Of a stretch of 64,000 nucleotides of DNA, positions 4,424 through 49,125 are shown in pieces (positions within the stretch are counted from its first letter, which is position 1; the number at the start of each line of letters is the position of its first letter). Source of the stretch: Phyllobates terribilis (taxonomy: Eukaryota); assembly GCF_046119375.1 (NCBI RefSeq), contig NW_027362768.1:145390001-145454000 (forward strand). Reading direction: 5' to 3'. The translations under genes and the position numbers were made by a program. The notes beneath the pieces are model-generated. The model had not been told where the DNA came from and made no database searches. It was given only the letters and a program-made list of their open reading frames with translations.

Positions 4424-5374
4424 ATGGAACCCGGTGGCACCCAAGCTCCCTCGCTCTCGGACCTGTGTCATGAACTGTCCCGTCAAAGGTCCCAACAGGA
4501 GTCCATCCTGGGTCACCTGCGGAATGTCAATACTCGCCTGGACACTCTGACTGCTCCACCAGCAACCTCCGCCAGTGCCATGTCTCGCAATCCGGCAGCT
4601 CCGCTGCCCACTAATACCATGGTATCCTACCCCGGACACCGGCTTTCTGCACCTCCTCGCTTCGGAGGCGACTCCGCCCAGGCTCGGGGCTTCATAAATC
4701 AGTGCACCCTGCACTTTGAACTATTGTCCCACCAGTTTAACTCCGACCGGGCCAAAATTGTATTCATCATGTCCCATCTCACCGGGGAGGCCCTGGCCTG
4801 GCTAAATCCTCTATGGGAGAGAGGAGACCTCCTGGTGTCCAACTTGCCTGCTTTTCTCACGGCTTTCCGGAAAGTCTTCGACGAACCCGGACGGAAGACC
4901 TCATCCGCATCATCACTGCTACGCCTCCGTCAGGGAAGTCTCACCGTGGGCCAATATGCCATACGGTTCCGTACCCTTGCCTCGGAGCTGGCCTGGGATA
5001 ACGACGCTCTGGTATCCGTCTTCTGGGAGGGTCTGTCCGGCCGTATTAAAGATGAACTTGCCGGTCGGGACATTCCTACCACTCTCGATGACCTAATAAC
5101 TCTTGCCACCCGGATTGACCTACGGTTCCAGGAGCGTGCCAAAGAGGTCACCCGTGAGAGGAGGTTACCATGTCTAGCTCCTACTTTTCAGAAACCCGTC
5201 ACTCCCTCCGTCTCTACCCAGGTACACTCTCCTGAGTCTATGCAGGTTGACCAGACCAAGATGGTCAAAACCCGTCAGGACTTACGCCGTGCCGAAGGGA
5301 GCTGCTTCTTCTGTGGCAGTAAGGAGCACCGGATCCGTGCCTGCCCGGAGAGGTCGGGAAACGCCTGTGTCTAG
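4424..5374 (+). CDS. Gypsy Gag (316 aa)
   Basis: Retrotransposon-gag core (PPRFGGD...RGFINQC; LRQGSLTVGQYAIRF) and CCHC knuckle CFFCGSKEHRIRAC; ATG directly after the PBS. Confidence 0.95.
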   Translation: MEPGGTQAPSLSDLCHELSRQRSQQESILGHLRNVNTRLDTLTAPPATSASAMSRNPAAPLPTNTMVSYPGHRLSAPPRFGGDSAQARGFINQCTLHFELLSHQFNSDRAKIVFIMSHLTGEALAWLNPLWERGDLLVSNLPAFLTAFRKVFDEPGRKTSSASSLLRLRQGSLTVGQYAIRFRTLASELAWDNDALVSVFWEGLSGRIKDELAGRDIPTTLDDLITLATRIDLRFQERAKEVTRERRLPCLAPTFQKPVTPSVSTQVHSPESMQVDQTKMVKTRQDLRRAEGSCFFCGSKEHRIRACPERSGNACV

Positions 5375-8300
5375 GTTCGCTCAGAGAGGTCAACCTAGAC
5401 AAGAATAAATCCTCTCCATCTCTGCTGCTGTCAGTCTCAATCGTCTGCGTGGAGAACCGTTATTTCGAACTAGCCCAACTTGACTCTGGAGCAGCCGGGA
5501 ATCTTATTTCACAGTCCCTGGTAGAGAAATACCGCATCCCCACCAAACCTCTGGCTGTACCCTTGTCTGTTGCTGCCGTGGATGGGGGCCTCTTACCACG
5601 CCCCACCCAACTCATCACCGAATCCATTACTCTGCAGGTGGGAATGCTGCATTCTGAGAGTATCTCCTTTCATGTTCTGCCTGGACTCTCTCACGCCCTC
5701 TTGCTAGGCCTACCTTGGCTCCAGAGACATGCACCCGTGCTTGACTGGCAGACCAGAGAAGTCCTTCGCTGGGGACAGGACTGCCATAATACCTGTCTGG
5801 TTCCCGTCCATCCCGTCCGTCCTTCTCCTACCCCAGCTAATCTACCTGGACTTCCGATTCCTTATTGGTCTTATGCTGATGTCTTTAATAAAAAGGAAGC
5901 AGAGACACTACCTCCTCATAGACCATACGACTGCCCTATCGACCTGTTACCTGGTACTACTCCTCCCCGTGGGCGTATTTATCCTTTATCCGCTGCTGAG
6001 ACCTGGTCGATGTCCGAATATATTGAGGAGAATCTGGCCAGGGGATTCATCCGGAAATCTACCTCCCCGGCGGGAGCAGGCTTCTTTTTCGTCAAAAAGA
6101 AGGACGGCTCTCTCCGTCCCTGTATAGACTATAGAGGCCTTAACCAGATCACAGTGAAGAATAAGTACCCCCTTCCGCTCATTCCGGAGTTATTTGATCG
6201 TCTGAGGGGGGCTAGAATCTTCACCAAACTGGACCTCCGTGGGGCGTACAACCTGGTTCGTATCCGTCAGGGGGATGAATGGAAGACGGCATTCAACACC
6301 CGGGACGGCCACTATGAATATCTGGTAATGCCCTTTGGCCTCTGTAACGCTCCTGCCGTCTTTCAAGAGTTGGTCAATGACATCTTCCGGGACCTTCTCT
6401 ACTCCTGCGTAGTGGTGTACCTGGACGACATCTTGGTCTTCTCTCCGGATCTCCAGACTCACCGGAGGGATGTTCGTCAGGTCCTGCTCAGGCTCAGGCA
6501 GAACCATCTCTACGCTAAATATGAGAAGTGCCTCTTTGAGCAGACCTCGCTTCCGTTTCTGGGCTACATTATCTCTCAGACCGGCCTACAAATGGATCCT
6601 GAGAAACTGTCTGCCATCGAGAAATGGCCCCGACCAGAGGGATTGAAAGCTATTCAACGGTTCCTGGGCTTCGCCAACTATTACCGCCTCTTCATCCCGC
6701 ACTTCTCTTCCCGGACTGCCCCAATTTCCGCGCTCACCCGTAAGGGTACTAATCCCAAAGAGTGGCCGCCCGAAGCAGAGGAGGCCTTTCTTTCCCTAAA
6801 ACAGGCCTTCTCTTCCGCCCCGGTGCTGCATCGCCCGGACGGCAACAAGCAGTTCTTCCTGGAAGTTGACGCCTCCTCCTCTGGAGCCGGAGCGGTACTT
6901 ACTCAAAAATCATCTTCCGGGAGAATGGTAACTTGTGGCTTCTTCTCCAAACTCTTCTCCTCTTCTTAGCGCAACTATTCCATAGGAGACCGAGAGTTAT
7001 TGGCCATCAAGCTGGCGTTGGAGGAGTGGCGTTACCTACTCGAGGGGGCTCTTCATCCGGTAATAATTTACACTGACCACAAGAACTTGGCTTACCTCCA
7101 GCATGCCCAGAGACTTAACCCGCGCCAAGCCCGGTGGTCCTTGTTTTTTGCTCGCTTTGATTTTGTTCTTCATTTTCGCCCGGCTGACAAAAACGTCAAA
7201 GCAGACGCCTTGTCCCGATCCTTTCTGGTGTCCGATCTCGAGGAAGAACCTAAACATATCATCGATCCCGCCAGAGTAATGCAGGTGGCTCCCGTGAGTC
7301 TAAATCGTCTCCCTCCCGGTAAGACGTTTGTTTCAGTACCTGATCGGGAGAAGATCCTACACTGGGGCCATTCGTCTAAACTAGCTGGCCACGCCGGTCA
7401 GAAAAAGACCCTCCAGCTTATTGCCCGGCACTATTGGTGGCCTACCCTGCACAAGGACATAATAGACTTTGTTTCTGCCTGTGTGTCCTGCGCCCGCAAC
7501 AAAGTCCCGAGACATCTGCCAGCCGGACGCCTCCTTCCGCTTCCTGTACCTGCTGCCCCCTGGCAGCATATAGCAATGGACTTTATAACCGATCTCCCCG
7601 TCTCTGCCGGTTGTACGGTCATTTGGGTTGTCGCTGACCGCTTTTCCAAGATGGCTCACTTTATTCCCCTGCCAGGCCTTCCGTCTGCACCCGAGCTGGC
7701 TAAAGACTTTATCCGCCACATCTTCCGTCTTCATGGCCTGCCCCTCCACATCGTGTCGGATCGTGGGGTACAGTTCACCTCACGTTTCTGGAGAGCCACT
7801 TGTAAACTACTAGACGTCACCCTGGACTTCTCTTCCGCTTACCACCCACAGTCCAATGGTCAAGTGGAGCGGATCAATCAGAATCTGACCAGTTACCTCC
7901 GGCACTTCGTTAATGCCCACCATTCTGACTGGGTGGATCTCCTACCATGGGCCGAGTTCTCTTATAATAATCACGAGAGCGAATCCTCCTCCAAATCCCC
8001 GTTTTTTGTAGTCTTTGGTCAGCATCCTCGGATTCCTTTTCCTGTCTCCACCTCTGTGGACAACCCGGCTGCGGAATCTCTCGTTAGCAAATTTTCCTCC
8101 ATATGGGAGAGTACCCGGTCCGCACTCCTTCTGTCATCCGAGCGTATGAAAAGACACGCTGACAAAAAACGCCTGGATCCTCCACAATTTCGTCCAGGAG
8201 ATAAAGTCTGGCTCTCATCTAAATATGTTCGACTCAAGAAACCTTCTTACAAGTTAGGGCCTCGGTTCATCGGTCCTCTGGAGGTCATCAGTCAGATCAA

Positions 8301-8628
8301 CCCGGTGGCCTATAAATTGAAACTCCCGGCCAACTTACGGATCCCTAACTCCTTCCATGTATCTCTCCTCAAACCCGTGGTGCTTAACTCTTTTTCCAAG
8401 TCTACAGGTACGCCTCCTGCTCCGGTTTCTGCTGAGGACGAGTTTGAGGTAGAGAACATTCTTGCCACCAAAAGGGTAAGAGGAAAGACCTTTTTTCTGG
8501 TAGATTGGAAGGGGTTTGGTCCTGAGGAGAGAACGTGGGAGCCCCGGGAGAACATCCATGCCCCTCTCATCCTAGCTAAATTTCTATCTGGCCTAAAAAA
8601 GGGGGGCCTAAAGGGGGGGGTACTGTAG
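5356..8628 (+). pseudogene. Gypsy Pol (protease-RT-RNaseH-integrase-chromodomain), -1 frame to gag, one premature TAG at 6967-6969
   Basis: LDSGA protease, YLDD RT, VDASS RNase H, H..H/C..C zinc finger, DDE core, GPL (GPY/F-like), chromodomain FEVENIL...FLVDWKGFGPEERTWEP. ORFs 5449-6969 and 7000-8628 are in the same frame. Confidence 0.93.
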
Positions 8629-12337: not shown

Positions 12338-13889
12338 GACTGGCGTATAGCAAATGTGGTGCCAATATTCAAAAAGGGGACAAAAACTGAACTTGGAAAT
12401 TATAGACCAGTAAAGCTTAACCTCTACTGTGGGTAAAATCCTGGAGGGTTTCCTAAGAGATGCTATTCTAGAGTATCTGAAGAAGAATAACCTCATGACC
12501 CAATATCAACATGGGTTTACGAGGGACCGTTCCTGTCAAACTAATCTGATCAGTTTTTATGAGGAGGCAAGTTCTGGACTGGACCAAGGAAATGCAGTGG
12601 ATGTTGTGTATATGGACTTTTCAAAAGCTTTTCATACGGTTCCACACAAAAAGTTGATATATAAAATGAGAACAATGGGGATAGGGGAAAATATATGTAT
12701 GTGGGTTAAGAATTGGCTCAGTAATAGGAAACAAAGGGTGGTTATTAATGGAAAACACTCAGACTGGGTCTCAGTTAACAGGGGGGTACCACAGGGGTCT
12801 GTATTGGGCCCGCTTCTTTTTAACATATTTATTAATGACCTTGTAGGGGGCATACAGAGTAATATTTCAATATTTGCAGATGACACTAAACTCTGCAGGG
12901 TAATCAATACAGAGGAGGACAATTTTATATTACAGGAGGATCTATGTAAACTAGAAGCTTGGGCTGATAAATGGAAAATGAGCTTTAATGGGGATAAATG
13001 TAAGGTAATGCACTTGGGCAGAGGAAATAAAATGTATAATTATATGCTTAATTGTAAAACACTGGGCAAAACTGTAACTGAAAAAGACCTGGGTGTATTG
13101 GTGGATGACAAGCTCACGTTTAGTGGCCAGTGTCAGGCAGCTGCTGCAAAGGCAAATAAAATAATGGGATGCATTAAAAGAGGCATAGATGCTCATGAGG
13201 AGAACATAATTTTACCTCTATACAAGTCATTAGTGCAGCCACACTTAGAATACTGTGTACAGTTCTGGTCTCTGGTGTATAAGAAAGACATAGCTGAACT
13301 AGAGAGGGTGCAGAGAAGAGCAACCAAGGTTATTAGAGGACTGGGGGGTCTGCAATACCAAGACACGTTATTACACTTGGGGTTATTTACTGTGGAAAAA
13401 AGAAGGCTTAGGGGTGATCTTATTACTATGTGCAAGTATATGAGGGGACAGTACAAAGACCTTTCTACTGATCTTTTTACTCTGAGGCCTGAGACTGGGA
13501 CAAGGGGGCATCTTCTACGTCTGGAGGAAAGAAGGTTTAATCATAATCACAGACGCGGATTCTTTACTGTAAGAGCAGTGAGACTATGGAACTCTCTGCC
13601 ACATGATGTTGTAATGAGTGATTCACTATTAAAATTTAAGAAGGGCATGGATGCCTTTCTTGAAAAGTATAATATTACAGGTTATAAATACTAGATTCCT
13701 TGATAGGGCGTTGATCCAGGGAACTAGTCTGATTGTCGTATGGAGTCGGGAAGGAATTTTTTTCCCCAATGTGGAGCTTAGTGTTTGCCACATGTTTTTT
13801 TTTGCCTTCCTCTGGATCAACATGTTAGGCTATGGGTTGAACTAGATGGACTTAGTCTTCCTTCAACCTTAAAAACTATGTTACTATGT
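12338..13889 (+). mobile_element. CR1 LINE, 5'-truncated (RT and C-terminal ORF2 open 12429-13694)
   Basis: VVYMDFSKAF, GVPQGSVLGPLLFNIFINDL, FADD, LFTVEKRRLRGDLI; 3' tail CTATGTTACTATGT. Confidence 0.93.
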
Positions 13890-29452: not shown

Positions 29453-31252
29453 ATGGTCCGTCAGACTTATACCGCAGAGGAGGCGTATGCCCTGCTATGT
29501 TCTGACAGTGACAATCTCAGATGGAGATGTGGCTTTTGAGGGCTTTAGTAGCGGCGACAGTGAGAGCTCAGAAATGAGCAGTGATTCTGTTCCATCCTCA
29601 AGCTCAAGGACCAGTACAGCAATAGGTGCAAATAGCGCTACTGGAGAAACGTCTCCAAATCAGGGAACACTGGCCAGTACAAGCGCTGTCCCTGCTACTA
29701 GTGAATTGGCGCACGCCAGTGTACAAAGGGCTCTGCCACTTGATATAGCATTTCCCAGATGGGAGGCTTCGGATTCGGCTGCTCCATTCAGCCTTGATTT
29801 CAACGCCACTCCTGGTATAAATGTGGAGGTGGAAGATTTTGGACCAATTAATTTTTTTAATTTGTTTTTTACAGACAGCTTGTTAGAGCATATTGTTGTG
29901 CAAACAAATTTATACGCGTCCCAATTCATAAGCCAGAATCCCCGATCTTACTATGCTAGGGCAAATTTATGGACATCAACTAATGTCCCGGAAATAAAAA
30001 AAATTTTAGGACTTACATTTGCCATGGGGCTTGTTAAAAAACCGAGCATTCAATCCTACTGGTCCAACCACCCTGTTCAAGCCACCCCTATGTTTTCCGT
30101 CATTCTTCCTAGGACCCGTTATGAAATGCTCATGCGGTTTTGGCATTTTAACGACAATAGTCAATGCCTGCCCAGAAATGCCCCAGAACATGACAGATTA
30201 TATAAAATCAGACCCATCATTGAAAAATTTGTCAGAAAAATTCTTAAGCCTCTACACCCCAACACAAAATATTTCTATAGATGAGTCCCTTGTAAAATTC
30301 AAAGGAAGACTGCCCCTCAAGCAATTTATCCCATCTAAGAGGGCAAGGTTCAGAATAAAGCTCTATAAAATGTGTGAAAGTTCAACCGGATACACATCCG
30401 CTTTTCGCATATATGAGGGGAAAGATGGCCAACTAAACCCACCAGGATGCCCTACTTATCTGGGGACATCTGGAAAAATTGTTTGGGAGATAAGTCCATT
30501 TTTTACAAAAAGGCTACAATCTGTATGTGGACAATTATTACACCAGCATACCCCTATTTAAAAGTCTGGTTGAAAACAACATCGGAGCTTGTGGGACCAT
30601 TCGTAAAAACCGTCAGGGGTTTCCACAACCATTGGTCAATCAAAAGTTCCAAAGGGGGCAGTCAGGGGCTGTACGCAATGGAGAGCTGTTTGCCCTTAAG
30701 TATAGGGATAAGAAGGATATTTTTGTCCTCAGCTCGATCCACACAGATGCCACAAGGGCCACTGTAGAACTAGGATCCACCACTCCGAAGCAAAAACCTG
30801 TGTCAGTCATTGACTACAACAAACACATGGGGGGTGTGGACCTTGCAGACCAGGTTCTACAGCCATACCAGGTATCAAGAAAGTCCTATACCCGGTATAA
30901 AAAGTGTGTTATTTATTTGTTTCAGGTGGCCACATACAATTCTTTTGTGTTGTACAAAAAAGCAGGAAATTCAGATACTTTTCTTGATTATCAAGAAAAG
31001 GTAATTGAAAATCTTATTTTTGATGAAGCCCGGCTCATCCGTTCTGAGGATGTGAAAAGACTCACTCAGCGACATTTTATTGCACTTATTCCAGCAACAG
31101 AAATGAGAAGGAATCCCCAGAAAAGATGTTGTGTATGTACTAAGAGAGGAATAAGGCGTGATACCCGCTACTATTGCCCACAATGCCCATCATTGCCAGC
31201 CTTATGCGTCACTGACTGCTTTAAAATCTTCCACACAGAACCACGTTTTTAA
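29453..31252 (+). pseudogene. piggyBac (PGBD4-like) transposase, three frameshifts
   Basis: MVRQTYTAEEAYALLCSDSD start. Catalytic-Asp motifs IDESLVKFKGR, MDNYYTS and YNKHMGGVDLAD, plus a C-terminal Cys-rich domain, spread over ORFs in three frames. Confidence 0.92.
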
Positions 31253-42440: not shown

Positions 42441-43955
42441 CAAGTGCTTCTCACTAAATTAGAATATCAAAAAGTTAATTTACTTCAGTTCTTCAATACA
42501 AAAAGTGAAACTCTTATATTAGAGTCATTACAGACAGAGTGATCTATTTCACGTGTTTATTTCTGTTAATGTTGATGATTATGGCTGACAGCCAATGAAA
42601 ATTAGAATACTTTATAACAGCTTGAAAAATGTTTTTAAAATCCAAAATGTTGGCCTACTGAAATGTCTGTTCAGTAAATGCCTTCAATACTTGGTCGGGG
42701 CTCCTTTTGCATCAATTACTGCATCAATGCGGCGTGGCATGGAGGTGATCAGCCTGTGGCACTGCTGAGGTGTTATGGAAGCCCAGGTTGCTTTGATAGC
42801 AGCCTTCAGCTCGTTTGCATTGTTGGGTCTGGGGTCTCTCATCTTCCTCTTGACAATACCCCATAGATTCTGCATGGGGTTAATGTCAGGCGAGTTTGCT
42901 GGCCAATCAAGCACAGTGATACTGTTGTGTGTAAACCAGGTATTGGTACTTTTGGCAGTGTGGACAGGTGCCAAGTCCTGCTGGAGAATGACATTTCCAT
43001 CTCCAAAAAGCTTGTCGGCAGAGGGAAGCATGAAGTGCTCTAAAATGTCCTGGTAGACGGCTGCGCTGACTTTGGTCTTGATAAAACACAGTGGACCTAC
43101 ACCAGCAGATGACATGGCTCCCCAAACCATCACTGATTGTGGAAACTTCACACTAGACCCCCAGCAGCTTGGATTGTGGCCTCTCCACTCTTCCTCCAGA
43201 CTCTGGGACCTTGATTTCCAAATGAAATCCAAAATTTACTTTCATTTGAAAACACCTTGGACCACTGAGCAACAGTCCAGGTCTTTGTCTCTTTGGCTCA
43301 GGTAAGACGCTTCTGGCGCTGTCTATTGGTCATGAGTGGCTTGACACAAGAAATGCGACACTTGTAGCCCATGTCCTGGATACGTCTGTGTGTGGTGGCT
43401 CTTGAACCAATGACTCCAGCAGCAGTCCACTCCTTGTGAATCTCCCCCAAATTTTTGAATGGCCTTTTCTTAACAATCCTTTCAAGGCTGCGGTTATCGG
43501 TTGCCTGTGCACCTTTTTCTACCACACTTTTTCCATCCACTCAACTTTCCATTAATATGCTTGGATACAGCACTCTGAACAGCCAGCTTCTTTAGCGATG
43601 ACCTTTTGTGGCTTACCCTCCTTGTGGAGTGTGTCAATGACTTCCTTCTGGACATCTGTCAAGTCAGAAGTCTTCCCCATGATTGTGGAGCCTACTGAAA
43701 CAGACTAAGGGACCTTTTTAAACGCATCGGAAGCCTTTGCAGGTGTGTTTTGTTAATTATTTTAATTTACTGAGATAATGACTTGTGTTTTCATTGGCTG
43801 TAAGCCATAATCATCAACATTAACAGAAATAAACACTTGAAATAGATCAATCTGTTTTTAGTGACTCTATATAATATAGGAGTTTCACTTTTTGAATTGA
43901 AGAACTGAAATAAATTAACTGTTTGATGATATTCTAATTTAGTGAGAAGCACTTG
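42441..43955 (-). mobile_element. Tc1 transposon, apparently full length (~1.5 kb), frameshifted
   Basis: TA-flanked perfect 29-bp terminal IR CAAGTGCTTCTCACTAAATTAGAATATCA. Transposase runs from ATG 43680 (MGKTSDLTDVQK) to 42684, with VMVWGAMS, QQDLAPVH and WPANSPDINP. Confidence 0.93.
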
Positions 43956-44482: not shown

Positions 44483-44589
44483 CGGAGATGTAGCTGGTGT
44501 GTTTGTTCTGCTTGTCTTGCTGGACGAGCTGCTCGTGCAGCTGTTTCCCCACTCCGTTCTGGAAATTACGTGCCAGCTGCTCCGTCTTG
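44483..44589 (-). CDS. cpt2: cpt2 coding exon 3 (107 nt)
   Basis: [36 protein letters not shown]; AG/GT boundaries. Confidence 0.96.
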
Positions 44590-44675
44590 CTGAAAGATAT
44601 AATGATCGTTATGTTGGTAAATGCGATAACTCTAATAAACGGGCACCCGTGCTATTCGGACATTACGCCCCCTAC

Positions 44676-44756
44676 CTGAACTGCTCATCATCTAGGAGAG
44701 GTCGCTGAGCGTTTAGGTATCTTTTTATCGTGTCTTCAAGTTTAGGAACTGGCAAT
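44676..44756 (-). CDS. cpt2: cpt2 coding exon 2 (81 nt)
   Basis: [26 protein letters not shown]; AG/GT boundaries. Confidence 0.96.
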
Positions 44757-45720
44757 CTGGAAAACATAGGGGAAGGAATTTGTACATAAGTAATTATACT
44801 AAAATGCATAACAATTTTTAGAAAGCCAAAGCTAATGAAATGACACAGAGATACAAGACCTGGCCCCAGTGCAGACTATGGACTTGCCACCTGCTCCTAG
44901 TAAAGCAGATTAGCAATCTACATACGGCTATCGTGCATATATTACAATAAAGCCTGTGTATGTGCAGAATCATGCTCTACAAGTAATACAAGAATAGTTT
45001 GGCATGTTACTACCACTCATATTTCTTATTGTAAAAGTACATTAAAAAGGTGGTCTGCAGCACAGAATGACTTTTCAAACCAAGTACAGGCGCTCGGTGC
45101 ACCCTTGGTGTGGCCAACCAGTTCAGAGCACCTTTCCACTTGCTTGTTTTCTGTCCATCTCTGCCTCTAAAGCCAGAGCTGTCAATCAAAAAGAAAAGGG
45201 ATTGAAGACAGAAAAAAAAAACAAAACATGTAGATGGGAAGGTGTACTTAAATCTGTGCCACGAGTGCACTGAGTGACTGTGTTTGGTTTGAACAGTCAT
45301 TCTGTGCTGACAGATTCCCTTTAAGAAGAGATCATACAATACGGGTTAAGGAGAATGAAGCAGAGCTCCAATAAGAAATACCAGGAAACAACCAGAAAAA
45401 AAACAAAAAAAAAACCCCACAACCCCCCCCCCCCCCGCAACCTAATCCTAAACACCCCTTGTAATTAAACAGTGCAACTGTTTACTGCAGGGATCACACA
45501 TGTGACATCAGGCGTGTAGGTTATATTTTTGCCTGGCATGCTGGGTAGCATACCTGTGGGAGAACAGGGGTTGGGCAGCATTAATAGAAGGTGGGGATCC
45601 AGCTACTGCAAGAATCTTCTTTATAAACATCTTTTATTGATATGCTCTAAAAAATATAAGGTTAAAAAATGGAAACACTTGGGCAAAAATATGGAACGTT
45701 TCACAAATTTGTGTGGTCTT

Positions 45721-45764
45721 TGCGCAAGGATGACACGCAAATTCGTAAAGCGTTCCATATTTTT
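45721..45764 (+). pseudogene. U6 snRNA 3'-half fragment, with an inverted copy at 45685-45726
   Basis: TGCGCAAGGATGACACGCAAATTCGTAAAGCGTTCCATATTTTT differs at one position from the canonical U6 3' end (...TTCGTGAAGCG...). Confidence 0.92.
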
Positions 45765-45798
45765 ACCCAAGTGTTTCCATTTTTTTAACCTTCTAGAG

Positions 45799-45986
45799 CA
45801 GTGTTCCCCCAACTCAAGTCCCCAAGGCCCACCAAAAGATCATGTTTTCAGGATTTCCTTGCTATTACACAGGTGGTGGAATTATTGTCGGTGCAGGTGA
45901 TGTAATTATCACCTGAGCAATACTAAGGAAATCCTGAAAACATGGCCTGTTGTTGGGCCTTGAGGACTGGAGTTGGGGGAACACTA
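45799..45986. mobile_element. hAT-type MITE
   Basis: TIR CAGTGTTCCCCCAACTC / GAGTTGGGGGAACACTA; degenerate 8-bp TSD TTCTAGAG / TTTCAGAG. Confidence 0.8.
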
Positions 45987-47515
45987 TTTCAGAGCATATC
46001 CATAAAAGCGGTTTAATAGGAGATTCTTGCAGTGGATGGATCCCCTCATTTTCTTCTATTAATGCTGCCAACCATTGCTCACCCACAGGTGTGCCACAGT
46101 GTATACCACCCAGTGCCCCAGCCCATGCCCTGCCCTACATGCCTGATGTCTCTTGAGTAGCTGGATTACCCTCCTTTTCTTCTATTATTGCACAACCTGA
46201 GAACAGCTCCGGGATCCTATCTGTGCACCGCACCCATCAAAGAATCCTTACCTGAACTGATGTGAATATTTTTTTTTCTCTAATGTTTGGCAGCATTGAC
46301 AACCATTAGTGAAATTAAAAAAAATAAATAAATAATTATTATTATTTTTTATTTTTTTTTATACACAGTCCAGTTGTTGATGTGGCCCAAAACCCAGCCA
46401 ACCCTGGCATGCCAATGGCTGCCTGATTTTCAAGGTCTGGTCTGCAGGATTTTGGCTACAACAGGCGGACAGTGTACTAGGAGTGGATTTGCGCAATGTG
46501 CGGGAAAGTAGAGGACGACGGCCATTTCGCGTTTTCACAATGCTTCTACGGGTCGTTCTCTACCGCACACCGCGTGAATGTCCCTTAAAATGGAATAAAG
46601 GACTTTACTTTTAGGAAACGGTGAGCGCCGCTTTTCTTCGCCTTCGCACAGACACTATTTCTGTTTACAGCGGAGCACCACCGTTATTCCTACCCTTTTC
46701 CTGACAAAAGCTCACAATAAAGGGACAGAAGTATAGTGCATGATTGTCTGGTGCTGTTAAGCTTAACCGTACCGCAGAGACACTTTGATAGCTAAGTTTA
46801 TTAGTAGGTTAACCACGTGGGTATAATCTGCCACATGTCAACAGAAAAATAATGAAATATAAAAAAAAAAAGTTGTGATTCTTTGAATGAAAAAATAAAT
46901 AAAAAATACAGAAACTGGCTGTGGTGGGAAGTGGTTAAAGCAATACTTCAGGAAAATCCGGTTACACCTAGTGCAGAGTATGAGACAGCGATGCAGAAGA
47001 TAAAGGTTACTAGGAAACTGGTCTGGACATAAGTCTGGGCAGTCGGCTGAGACAGATGTTCGGTTTTCCATGTATATGGATTCCTAATGGCTGCTGCGTC
47101 CACTGGCCTAGTTATTATTAGTGGACTCAACTGCTGTGTATGAACAGTTCTTACAATGCTCTAGCAAAAACATGCAACTTTGCAATCTATTTTATGTAGT
47201 AATTTCCCCTGGTCTTCAGGATCTGTTTGCAGTCTTTTAATAGGATCCTTAGATAATACTTCCAGTAGACAAATAAGTAATAATCTGCCGCCATCATGCG
47301 ATAAGACACAAAGGTGTAGGCTTTTTAGTGCAGTACAGTTATAGGAGCTGAGAATTGTATTCTTTGATGAAAGCTGAGCCGAGGTCTTGAAAACAATCTG
47401 TGAGGTATACAGAGCGTACACATTTTCATCATATAAAATAGCAGTGTTAATTTGCTGATGCTCTGACATTCTTCACTTTGCATCTACTGGAAAGAAGAGA
47501 AATGCAGATTCCCAC

Positions 47516-47673
47516 CTGGGTAGACTTTTCTGGAAGTGCATGGTCGGCACAATGCTTTTGTGCAAGTATTCTGTGTCACCGCTTCCAGAGCTATATGTCC
47601 TGAGCAAGACAGAACCTGGGGCACAGGATGAGCCTCCTTTCAAGAGGCAGGATTTAGTCAGGAGACGAGCCAT
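47516..47673 (-). CDS. cpt2: cpt2 coding exon 1 (158 nt; mitochondrial presequence)
   Basis: [12 protein letters not shown]...[19 protein letters not shown], donor AG|GTGGG. Total CDS 1983 nt = 660 aa + stop. Confidence 0.93.
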
Positions 47674-48075
47674 TTCTGCAAACTGAATCTGGGAAACCTG
47701 GAAAAGAACAGAAGTCCGGAGAATTAGAGATATGGGTACAAGAGGGGGACATGCTCAATGAGGCCATATTCCCAAATGCAAAAATGTGGCATTCTTCTTG
47801 CATATTTTCTGTTGCAAAATCCTTTGAAGCAGAGGTTTTTTTAATGGAAAAATACTGCAATTCCTCACTGTTGTTTTTTACATTTTTTCAGGCTCACTAT
47901 TGAAGTCTACAGCCTTGTTCCCATGCATCGTAAAAGCTGCATTTTTTTGTGCAAAAAATTCTCTGCATTTAATAGTTCAAGCAAAGTCAATGTGATTTCA
48001 TAAAAATTAATGCCTATCCTGTGGGTATAAAGACAGAGTGGAAATGTGCGGTTTTTGGTGCCTTTTTTTTTTCCT

Positions 48076-48778: not shown

Positions 48779-49125
48779 CGGGTCTCTCCCACGTGCGTGT
48801 ACGCGGCATCTGACTAGTGTCGGGTCTCTCCCACGTGCGTGTACGCGGCATCTGACTAGTGTCGGGTCTCTCCCACGTGCGTGTACGCGGCATCTGACTA
48901 GTGTCGGGTCTCTCCCACGTGCGTGTTCGCGGCATCTGACTAGTGTCGGGTCTCTCCCACGTGCGTGTACGCGGCATCTGACTAGTGTCGGGTCTCTCCC
49001 ACGTGCGTGTACGCGGCATCTGACTAGTGTCGGGTCTCTCCCACGTGCGTGTACGCGGCATCTGACTAGTGTCGGGTCTCTCCCACGTGCGTGTACGCGG
49101 CATCTGACTAGTGTCGGGTCTCTCC
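48779..49125. repeat. 42-bp CpG-rich minisatellite, 8.3 near-identical copies
   Basis: Unit CGGGTCTCTCCCACGTGCGTGTACGCGGCATCTGACTAGTGT; one substitution in the whole array. Confidence 0.95.

What the first reader, a model, noticed from the sequence alone, without database searches (positions are those of the whole stretch)
45504..46150. Spacer-less ~650-bp fold-back centred exactly on the U6 snRNA TGCGCA, inside a cpt2 intron
Seen: the U6 3' 44 nt (one mismatch) and ~180 bp of downstream sequence are mirrored around the palindromic hexamer TGCGCA (45721-45726). The symmetry continues past a later hAT MITE insertion, for example CTTTTATTGATATGCTCT versus AGAGCATATCCATAAAAG, and GACATCAGGCGTGTAGG versus CCTACATGCCTGATGTC. 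The U6 part of the right arm is much better preserved than that of the left. Inference: snap-back duplication at the U6 hairpin of a U6 gene flank or U6/LINE chimera. cpt2 pre-mRNA would contain a long hairpin with both sense and antisense U6 sequence, a potential Dicer/ADAR substrate or U6-pairing RNA. It could also be a palindromic MITE family that captured U6.
Basis: partly seen in the sequence, partly recalled or inferred. Interest (0 to 1): 0.7.

Follow-up and report, generated by a model that had tools for sequence, protein, structure and literature searches.

The report
Decayed U6 snRNA fold-back in cpt2 intron
An old, mutated mirror-image duplication of the last 44 bases of the U6 spliceosomal RNA plus about 200 bases of attached sequence sits in the first intron of a poison frog's cpt2 gene; it looks like a one-off copying accident, with no sign of function.

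Summary
Two inverted arms (45504-45720 and 45727-46150) flank the hexamer TGCGCA. They are 81.5% identical over 222 aligned columns (K2P 0.21, 8 indels). A 188-bp MITE with an 8-bp target duplication interrupts the right arm. The centre is nearly but not exactly symmetric: the left arm is 2 nt shorter next to the hexamer. Rfam finds U6 on both strands, below the gathering score. Exon mapping puts the structure in cpt2 intron 1, antisense to cpt2.

My reading is a single copying event that turned round in the U6 internal stem-loop. I slightly favour cDNA snap-back on a U6-tipped retro-chimera over a DNA-level template switch. Every U6 difference sits in one arm only, so U6 was still canonical when the arms formed. 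A 48-nt third partial copy abuts the right arm. No target-site duplication or LINE tail could be shown.

Copy number could not be tested, so a dispersed palindromic family stays open. Nothing supports function: the arms decay freely, and Engystomops has a ~140-bp intron 1 without the structure.

The parts
45504..45720 (.). Left arm. It is an inverted copy of the right arm. Its inner end (about 45680-45720) is a degenerate antisense copy of the U6 3' part.
   Evidence: arm alignment; U6 minus-strand match 45685-45733, 20.4 bits
45721..45726 (.). The self-complementary hexamer TGCGCA at the turn-round point. From my own knowledge of U6 it corresponds to U6 nt 64-69, in the apical loop of the internal stem-loop.
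   Evidence: sequence; arm register: 5 nt on the left versus 7 nt on the right between the hexamer and the first aligned base
45721..45764 (+). Sense copy of the last 44 nt of U6 snRNA, ending in a run of five T. It has one difference from canonical vertebrate U6 as I know it.
   Evidence: RF00026, 45661-45764, 39.7 bits, E 3.3e-8, below gathering score 44; reading
45768..45787 (+). A second, degenerate copy of the last ~19 nt of U6 (16/19), directly after the T run. Its mirror image lies at about 45664-45683 in the left arm. The two are perfectly complementary, so the motif predates the fold-back.
   Evidence: score 22; P 0.0014 against shuffles; 0 of about 5000 real windows reach it; pair I2
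45727..45798 (+). Right arm, inner part: the rest of U6 and the first 34 nt of flank, up to the MITE insertion site.
45799..45986 (.). Nested MITE, almost wholly palindromic (76-nt TIRs, 87%). It is flanked by the 8-bp TSD TTCTAGAG (45791-45798) and TTTCAGAG (45987-45994). The undisturbed site in the left arm is at 45645-45652 and reads TTTTAGAG in reverse complement.
   Evidence: pair I1; flanks and the left-arm counterpart
45987..46150 (+). Right arm, outer part.
46151..46198 (+). A third, partial, direct copy of right-arm segment 46022-46072. It abuts the end of the right arm, and the motif TCTTG is shared at the junction.
   Evidence: score 46 versus a shuffle maximum of 28; family D7
47516..47673 (-). 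cpt2 exon 1 (aa 1-53). The GT donor lies at 47515-47514 on the minus strand.
   Evidence: tblastn with Ranitomeya CPT2 P0001, 96% identity; sequence
44676..44756 (-). cpt2 exon 2 (81 nt). The AG acceptor lies at 44758-44757 on the minus strand. Intron 1 is therefore 44757-47515 and contains the fold-back.

Best explanation
This is a dead, one-off fold-back pseudogene. A polymerase was copying a template made of the 3' 44 nt of U6 snRNA followed by about 200 nt of other sequence. It stopped in the apical loop of the U6 internal stem-loop, at the self-complementary hexamer TGCGCA. It then switched to the complementary strand and copied the same stretch back outwards, giving two inverted arms. 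At the outer end it jumped once more, at the shared motif TCTTG, and re-copied 48 nt. I slightly favour a reverse transcriptase of a non-LTR retrotransposon as the polymerase. In that version, a cDNA primed on another RNA picked up U6 as an extra template and then underwent cDNA snap-back or dimer priming before joining to the chromosome in cpt2 intron 1. Afterwards the structure decayed neutrally, by about 0.1 substitutions per site per arm, with indels and a disturbed centre. A hAT-type MITE landed in the right arm. Shown here: the anatomy, the U6 identity, the intron location, the later MITE insertion and the drift of the arms. Inferred: the single event, the polymerase involved and the lack of function.
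For: The arms and the centre are as described. In the 31 well-aligned U6 positions the arms differ at 4 sites. By my knowledge of canonical U6, one arm keeps the canonical base at each of them (3 changes on the left, 2 of them at CpG; 1 on the right). There is therefore no shared derived change, so U6 was still canonical when the arms were made. That fits fresh U6 RNA or a live U6 gene as the source, with pseudogene and fold-back made together. The third partial copy with junction microhomology points to repeated template jumps. Literature: 5'-truncated U6 followed by a short L2, RTE or CR1 tail is the usual U6 chimera outside placental mammals (PMC4476161). In R2-protein insertions, two recorded classes of 5' junction are cDNA snap-back and fusion to an extra template that is 'almost always U6 RNA' (PMC11371274). 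L1-linked fold-backs by hairpin self-annealing have been described (PMC11702581). This cannot be an assembly artefact: the arms differ by 19%, have indels, and only one carries the MITE. Runs from other samples of the same organism hold 21-34% of the stretch's sampled words. Against function: the arms drift freely, and Engystomops intron 1 is only ~140 bp with no such structure.
Against: No target-site duplication can be shown (best 11/15, P 0.08). There is no poly(A) or LINE-type terminal repeat at the arm ends. The flank matches no LINE or other sequence in the 64-kb window, no tRNA and no Rfam family. The flank starts with an already degenerate U6-end-like motif shared by both arms, which fits the natural 3' flank of a U6 gene, that is a DNA source, at least as well. 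A turn-round with no loop at a 6-nt palindrome cannot be an intramolecular hairpin; it needs two strands to pair, or a lost loop. Copy number in the genome is unknown, so 'one-off' is an assumption.
Confidence: 0.4

Rival explanations
1. DNA-level template switch or fold-back repair. A U6 gene with its natural 3' flank, either resident in this intron or used as an ectopic repair template, was copied by a DNA polymerase. At a stalled fork or a break, the polymerase switched strands at the palindromic hexamer, producing the inverted duplication and losing the U6 5' half and promoter.
For: U6 was canonical at the time of the event, while the adjacent flank already carried a degenerate U6-end-like motif shared by both arms. 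That is what one expects of a selected gene next to a freely evolving flank. The hexamer offers 6 bp of microhomology for a strand switch. The extra 48-nt direct copy with junction microhomology is typical of multi-step replicative template switching. No TSD or LINE tail was found.
Against: No U6 5' half or promoter remains. The structure is a small island in an intron that is only ~140 bp long in Engystomops, so it arrived as an insertion. Transfer of a 200-bp gene fragment to an unrelated intron is more easily explained through RNA.
Confidence: 0.25
2. This is one copy of a dispersed palindromic (fold-back or MITE-like) repeat family of dendrobatid frogs whose centre carries a captured U6 fragment. 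In that case the arm divergence partly reflects the master copy and not age.
For: The element is wholly palindromic, with well-kept 17-nt termini (16/17). An arm-like 48-nt fragment lies next to it. The genome is rich in transposable elements.
Against: No TSD was found. There is no second copy in the 64-kb window, which only excludes very high copy numbers. The adjacent fragment abuts the arm end exactly, which fits a template jump better than a second insertion. No U6-centred repeat is on record in the papers searched. Searches outside the window were uninformative.
Confidence: 0.25
3. It is a functional RNA hairpin in the cpt2 pre-mRNA. Candidate roles are a source of small RNAs, an ADAR target with regulatory effect, or an antisense sponge for the U6 3' region.
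For: The predicted fold is very stable (-375.5 kcal/mol, z -29, longest uninterrupted helix 29 bp). The pre-mRNA carries a 43/44 antisense match to the U6 3' part.
Against: Any intronic inverted repeat folds like this. The arms have drifted by 19% with indels and a MITE insertion and show no maintained pairing. The anti-U6 segment is paired inside the hairpin. The structure is absent from the Engystomops intron. No RNA run holds the stretch. The microRNA-family matches are far below their gathering scores.
Confidence: 0.05

Closest known systems
5'-truncated U6/LINE chimeric retropseudogenes (U6-L2 in platypus, U6-RTE in opossum, U6-CR1 in turkey, U6-L1/L2/RTE in Anolis; Doucet et al. 2015, PMC4476161)
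   Same: The U6 copy lacks its 5' part and ends in its own T run. It is fused head-to-tail to a few hundred bases of unrelated sequence and lies dispersed in a gene intron.
   Different: Here the unit is duplicated as a mirror image around the U6 end. The downstream part could not be identified as a LINE tail, and no TSD was found. The same paper found no processed U6 pseudogenes in Xenopus tropicalis.
cDNA snap-back and 'extra template' (U6) 5' junctions of non-LTR retroelement insertions (R2 protein PRINT experiments, PMC11371274)
   Same: Both ingredients are recorded outcomes of target-primed reverse transcription: capture of U6 at the cDNA 3' end, and priming of further synthesis on the cDNA itself.
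   Different: Those are experimental junctions in human cells, seen separately. Here both would be combined in one old germline insertion, and the involvement of a reverse transcriptase is inferred, not shown.
Fold-back inversions from hairpin self-annealing or replicative template switching (for example L1-associated foldbacks, PMC11702581; the FoSTeS/MMBIR class, from my own knowledge)
   Same: It is an inverted duplication with a microhomology-sized palindrome at the turn-round and an extra small templated copy at one end.
   Different: The known cases are mostly kilobase-to-megabase chromosomal rearrangements. This one is a ~450-bp island inserted in an intron.
Palindromic MITEs and fold-back transposons
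   Same: The element is wholly made of two long inverted arms, is sub-kilobase in size and is intronic.
   Different: There is no TSD, no known terminal motif and no second copy seen, and the centre is an snRNA fragment.
Intronic inverted-repeat dsRNA, such as inverted Alu pairs edited by ADAR (from my own knowledge)
   Same: It would form a long imperfect intramolecular duplex in a pre-mRNA.
   Different: No RNA evidence was available here, and nothing distinguishes it from any other intronic inverted repeat.

Membership tests
U6 spliceosomal RNA gene (Rfam RF00026) | Covariance-model score at or above the gathering score (44 bits) | tested here: not met
   39.7 bits on the + strand and 20.4 bits on the - strand. 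No hit at gathering threshold anywhere in the window.
U6 spliceosomal RNA gene (Rfam RF00026) | The 5' half is present (5' stem-loop, ACAGAGA box), so that a functional RNA could be made | tested here: not met
   The sequence left of the hexamer is the mirror image of the 3' part (52 nt, 90% complementary) and not the U6 5' half (reading).
U6/LINE chimeric retropseudogene | The U6 part ends at its natural 3' T run and is fused directly to another sequence in the same orientation | tested here: met
   A run of five T at 45760-45764 is followed directly by non-U6 sequence, in both arms.
U6/LINE chimeric retropseudogene | The downstream partner is the 3' end of a LINE or SINE (poly(A) or a LINE-specific terminal repeat) | tested here: inconclusive
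   No match to the LINE or any other sequence in the window. No tandem repeat or poly(A) at the arm ends. No tRNA-like part. No frog repeat library was available.
U6/LINE chimeric retropseudogene | A target-site duplication flanks the whole insertion | tested here: inconclusive
   The best direct repeat across the boundaries is 11/15, P 0.08. At about 10% decay per site, a short TSD could be lost.
MITE or fold-back transposon family (the whole palindrome) | Multiple dispersed copies with the same termini | not testable with these tools
The window holds no second copy. Metagenome scans were blank or gave chance hits. ORF-based protein searches were blank, but so was the MITE control, so they carry no weight.
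MITE or fold-back transposon family (the whole palindrome) | A target-site duplication of fixed length | tested here: inconclusive
   Nothing significant was found.
hAT-type MITE (the nested 188-bp element) | Terminal inverted repeats and an 8-bp target-site duplication | tested here: met
   TIRs of 76 nt at 87% (pair I1). The TSD halves TTCTAGAG and TTTCAGAG each differ by one base from the undisturbed left-arm site TTTTAGAG. Family copy number was not tested.

The most novel reading that the evidence does not exclude
The U6-centred palindrome is one copy of a so far undescribed mobile family of dendrobatid frogs, built from a U6 3' fragment. This would be the first U6-derived fold-back or SINE-like element. 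Alternatively, its hairpin yields antisense-U6 small RNAs or edited dsRNA that affects cpt2 or splicing.
Probability: 0.12. Interest if true: 0.6.

Novelty: new variant of a known kind. Interest (0 to 1): 0.28.

Why it matters
If the reverse-transcriptase reading is right, this is a natural germline fossil that combines two side-reactions so far seen separately in experiments: capture of U6 as an extra template, and cDNA snap-back. It would also be a U6-derived retro-copy in a frog, whereas a survey found no processed U6 pseudogenes in Xenopus tropicalis (PMC4476161). It further marks the U6 internal stem-loop as a place where copying stops and turns. Beyond that it is a neutral passenger in an intron. 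It says little about cpt2 biology and opens no major question.

Tried and rejected
**Reads.** There is therefore no depth, joint or RNA evidence.

**Orthologous introns.** CPT2 loci of Ranitomeya imitator and Anomaloglossus baeobatrachus were found, but no DNA is served for those assemblies. The Dendrobates tinctorius isoform is not on record. Only Engystomops was readable.

**Copy number.**
- Earlier-findings look-ups by sequence or relatives were blank.
- The metagenome scan with an arm pattern was blank.
- The metagenome scan with the 20-mer just past the U6 T run gave four marine contigs with no further similarity, which are chance hits.
- A 56-aa reading frame of the right arm, searched against 1.84 billion protein representatives, gave one meaningless repeat-protein hit.
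- The same idea applied to the MITE as a positive control found nothing either. ORF-based searches therefore say nothing about non-coding repeats.
- Exact-product look-ups of two arm ORFs were blank.

**Rejected readings.**
- Assembly or sequencing palindrome artefact: the arms differ by 19%, have indels, and only one has the MITE.
- Full-length U6 pseudogene: the left side is the mirror of the 3' part, not the 5' half.
- microRNA precursor: the Rfam miRNA matches merely reflect the hairpin shape and score 30-170 bits below their gathering scores.
- Symmetry extending beyond the arms: not found.
- A model in which the cDNA folded back on the complement of the U6 stem-loop gives the right length (5 nt) for the left side of the centre but matches only 1 of 5 bases. 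It is no better than a 2-nt deletion plus substitutions.
Full report
**What is there.** Reading the sequence and the repeat scan confirm a chain of inverted matches around 45724:
- 45664-45715 against 45734-45785 (52 nt, 90%)
- 45624-45652 against 45987-46015 (86%)
- 45583-45620 against 46018-46055 (82%)
- 45574-45590 against 46053-46069 (17 nt, perfect)
- 45534-45574 against 46068-46108 (73%)

When the element at 45799-45986 is cut out, one local alignment joins them all at score 197-199. Shuffled sequences of this size reach at most 28. A global alignment of the two arms, read outward from the hexamer, gives 181 identities in 222 aligned columns (81.5%). There are 20 transitions, 21 transversions and 8 gap events, and K2P is 0.21. 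No symmetry continues beyond the arms. The arms are therefore 45504-45720 and 45727-46150.

**The centre.** The hexamer TGCGCA lies at 45721-45726. The centre is not strictly spacer-less. Five bases on the left and seven on the right separate the hexamer from the first well-aligned base. The left arm is thus 2 nt shorter, and the axis of the arms lies one base to the right of the hexamer's own axis. The 18 central bases are the worst-preserved part, which is usual for palindrome centres.

**U6 identity.** At gathering thresholds Rfam finds nothing in the whole window. With E-value thresholds it finds U6 (RF00026) at 45661-45764 on the + strand (39.7 bits, E 3e-8, gathering score 44). A weaker match lies on the - strand at 45685-45733 (20.4 bits). 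The microRNA families listed in the same output only reflect the hairpin shape and are far below their gathering scores.

As far as I know the canonical vertebrate U6 sequence, the right arm carries nt 64-107 with one G-to-A change. From the same knowledge, the hexamer is U64-A69, in the apical loop of the internal stem-loop. The sequence left of the hexamer is the mirror of the 3' part, not the U6 5' half. This is therefore not a U6 gene.

**Timing from the U6 part.** Over the 31 well-aligned U6 positions the arms differ at four sites. At each site one arm keeps the canonical base. Three changes are on the left, two of them CpG transitions, and one is on the right. No derived change is shared by both arms. 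U6 was therefore still canonical when the arms were made. With a per-arm decay of roughly 0.07-0.1, a long delay between loss of function and duplication would have left shared changes. That is within chance.

**The flank.** Directly after the run of five T comes a second, degenerate copy of the last ~19 nt of U6 (16/19). The probability is 0.0014 against shuffles, and none of about 5000 real windows reaches that score. Both arms carry it in identical form, so it was already degenerate when the fold-back formed. The remaining ~180 nt match nothing else in the window, including its LINE, Gypsy, piggyBac and Tc1 elements. They also match no tRNA and no Rfam family, and they contain no tandem repeat or poly(A).

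**Later and accessory events.**
- The element at 45799-45986 has 76-nt TIRs (87%). Its flanking octamers are TTCTAGAG and TTTCAGAG, and the left arm keeps the single undisturbed site TTTTAGAG. This is a hAT-type MITE that landed after the fold-back formed.
- Immediately after the right arm, 46151-46198 repeats right-arm segment 46022-46072 in direct orientation (score 46 against a shuffle maximum of 28). The motif TCTTG is shared at the junction. This is a third, partial copy.
- No target-site duplication can be shown across the outer boundaries (best 11/15, P 0.08).

**Gene context.** Pfam places carnitine acyltransferase exons on the minus strand. The nearest CPT2 proteins are from Ranitomeya, Dendrobates and Anomaloglossus, at 94-95% identity. 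Local tblastn with the Ranitomeya protein maps the exons as follows:
- exon 1: 47673-47516
- exon 2: 44756-44676
- exon 3: 44594-44481
- exon 4: 38694-37375
- exon 5: 34758-34387

Splice sites were read. The fold-back lies in intron 1 (44757-47515). The intact U6-sense copy is on the strand opposite to cpt2. The pre-mRNA therefore carries an antisense U6 3' segment (from the right arm) and a degenerate sense-like one (from the left arm).

A local ViennaRNA fold of the 663-nt minus strand gives -375.5 kcal/mol, against -167 ± 7 for shuffles (z -29). The longest uninterrupted helix is 29 bp, and it includes the anti-U6 segment.

**Comparison with other frogs.** The Engystomops pustulosus locus was readable (L005). 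Its intron 1 is only ~140 bp and contains nothing like the arms. The 2.76-kb intron here has therefore grown by insertions since these lineages split. Earlier notes of the scan call this genome a poison frog, and one names the golden poison frog; I did not test that.

- Closed-machine scripts did use them: ungapped mirror-register comparison across the axis; global arm alignment; local fold; local alignment and shuffle scoring within the window.
- In one search I compared the whole intron, these places included, by local blastn inside a script with the single Engystomops locus. No hit involved them. I should have cut them out.
- In one search I asked for relatives of 45986-46200, and the findings tool itself widened the look-up to 44486-47700, which covers those places. 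It returned nothing.

The run search shows that four runs of one sample hold 81-91% of the sampled words. Runs of other samples of the same organism hold 21-34%, other organisms hold 4-6%, and no RNA run holds the stretch. Without laying reads, I cannot say which parts are held.

**Copy number** is the crux and could not be measured. There is no second copy in 64 kb, which only excludes very high copy numbers. Metagenome pattern scans were blank or gave chance hits. A reading frame of the right arm found no relatives among 1.84 billion protein representatives. The same trick on the certainly repetitive MITE also found nothing, so this approach carries no weight. Exact-product look-ups were blank.

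**Explanation.** The anatomy suggests one copying event on a template that read, 5' to 3', 'U6 nt 64-107, then about 200 nt of other sequence'.
- Synthesis came in from the far end and stopped in the loop of the U6 internal stem-loop.
- It changed strand at a 6-nt self-complementary sequence and ran back out.
- It then jumped once more at a short microhomology.

I slightly favour a non-LTR reverse transcriptase, for three reasons.
- 5'-truncated U6 followed by a short LINE tail is the normal form of U6 chimeras outside placental mammals (PMC4476161).
- In R2-protein insertions, the recorded aberrant 5' junctions are cDNA snap-back and fusion to an extra template that is almost always U6 (PMC11371274).
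- U6 can also be ligated to other RNAs before reverse transcription (PMC6789731, abstract as listed; I did not read the paper).

Several points weigh against this reading.
- There is no TSD.
- No recognisable LINE tail was found.
- The old-looking U6-end motif in the flank fits a gene flank at least as well.
- A zero-loop turn-round needs two strands to pair, not one to fold.

A DNA-level template switch at a U6 gene is therefore a serious rival, and a dispersed palindromic family remains open. Function is unlikely. The arms drift freely, the centre is damaged, a MITE has landed in one arm, and the only outgroup intron lacks the structure. The arm divergence (K2P 0.21) suggests an age of tens of millions of years. 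This holds only if the arms were identical at birth and under ordinary vertebrate neutral rates, which are my assumption.

**Verdict.** The finding is a real and tidy structural curiosity, probably a neutral scar of polymerase template switching at U6. It is a new variant of known kinds (U6 chimeric pseudogenes, snap-back and fold-back junctions). Interest is low to moderate until the genome-wide copy number and the orthologous introns are checked.

Noticed in passing
window 48779-49125: A 42-bp tandem repeat, 8.3 copies at 99% identity. Each unit contains a CACGTG E-box. It lies about 1.1-1.5 kb upstream of the cpt2 start codon on the promoter side (family D1).
   Followed up: partly
window 45058-45309: A second MITE-like element in the same intron: 51-nt inverted termini (84%) separated by 150 nt (pair I3).
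   Followed up: no
window 42684-43232 (-): A Tc1/mariner-type DDE_3 transposase remnant inside cpt2 intron 3.
   Followed up: no
window 29487-31252 (+): A piggyBac-type transposase (DDE_Tnp_1_7 plus zinc finger) split into two reading frames.
   Followed up: no
window 4424-8628 (+) and 12429-13694 (+): A Gypsy/Ty3 element with gag, protease, RT, RNase H, integrase and chromodomain in three long frames, and a separate reverse-transcriptase ORF.
   Followed up: no
L005 6111-7386: In the Engystomops pustulosus contig, a second partial set of cpt2 exons (aa 38-209) follows the complete gene. It is either a tandem partial duplication or an assembly duplication.
   Followed up: no
window 45392-45440: An A-rich run followed by a run of 15 C, about 65-110 bp left of the fold-back and preceded by an AATAAG motif. 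It looks like the tail of an unrelated retro-copy.
   Followed up: no
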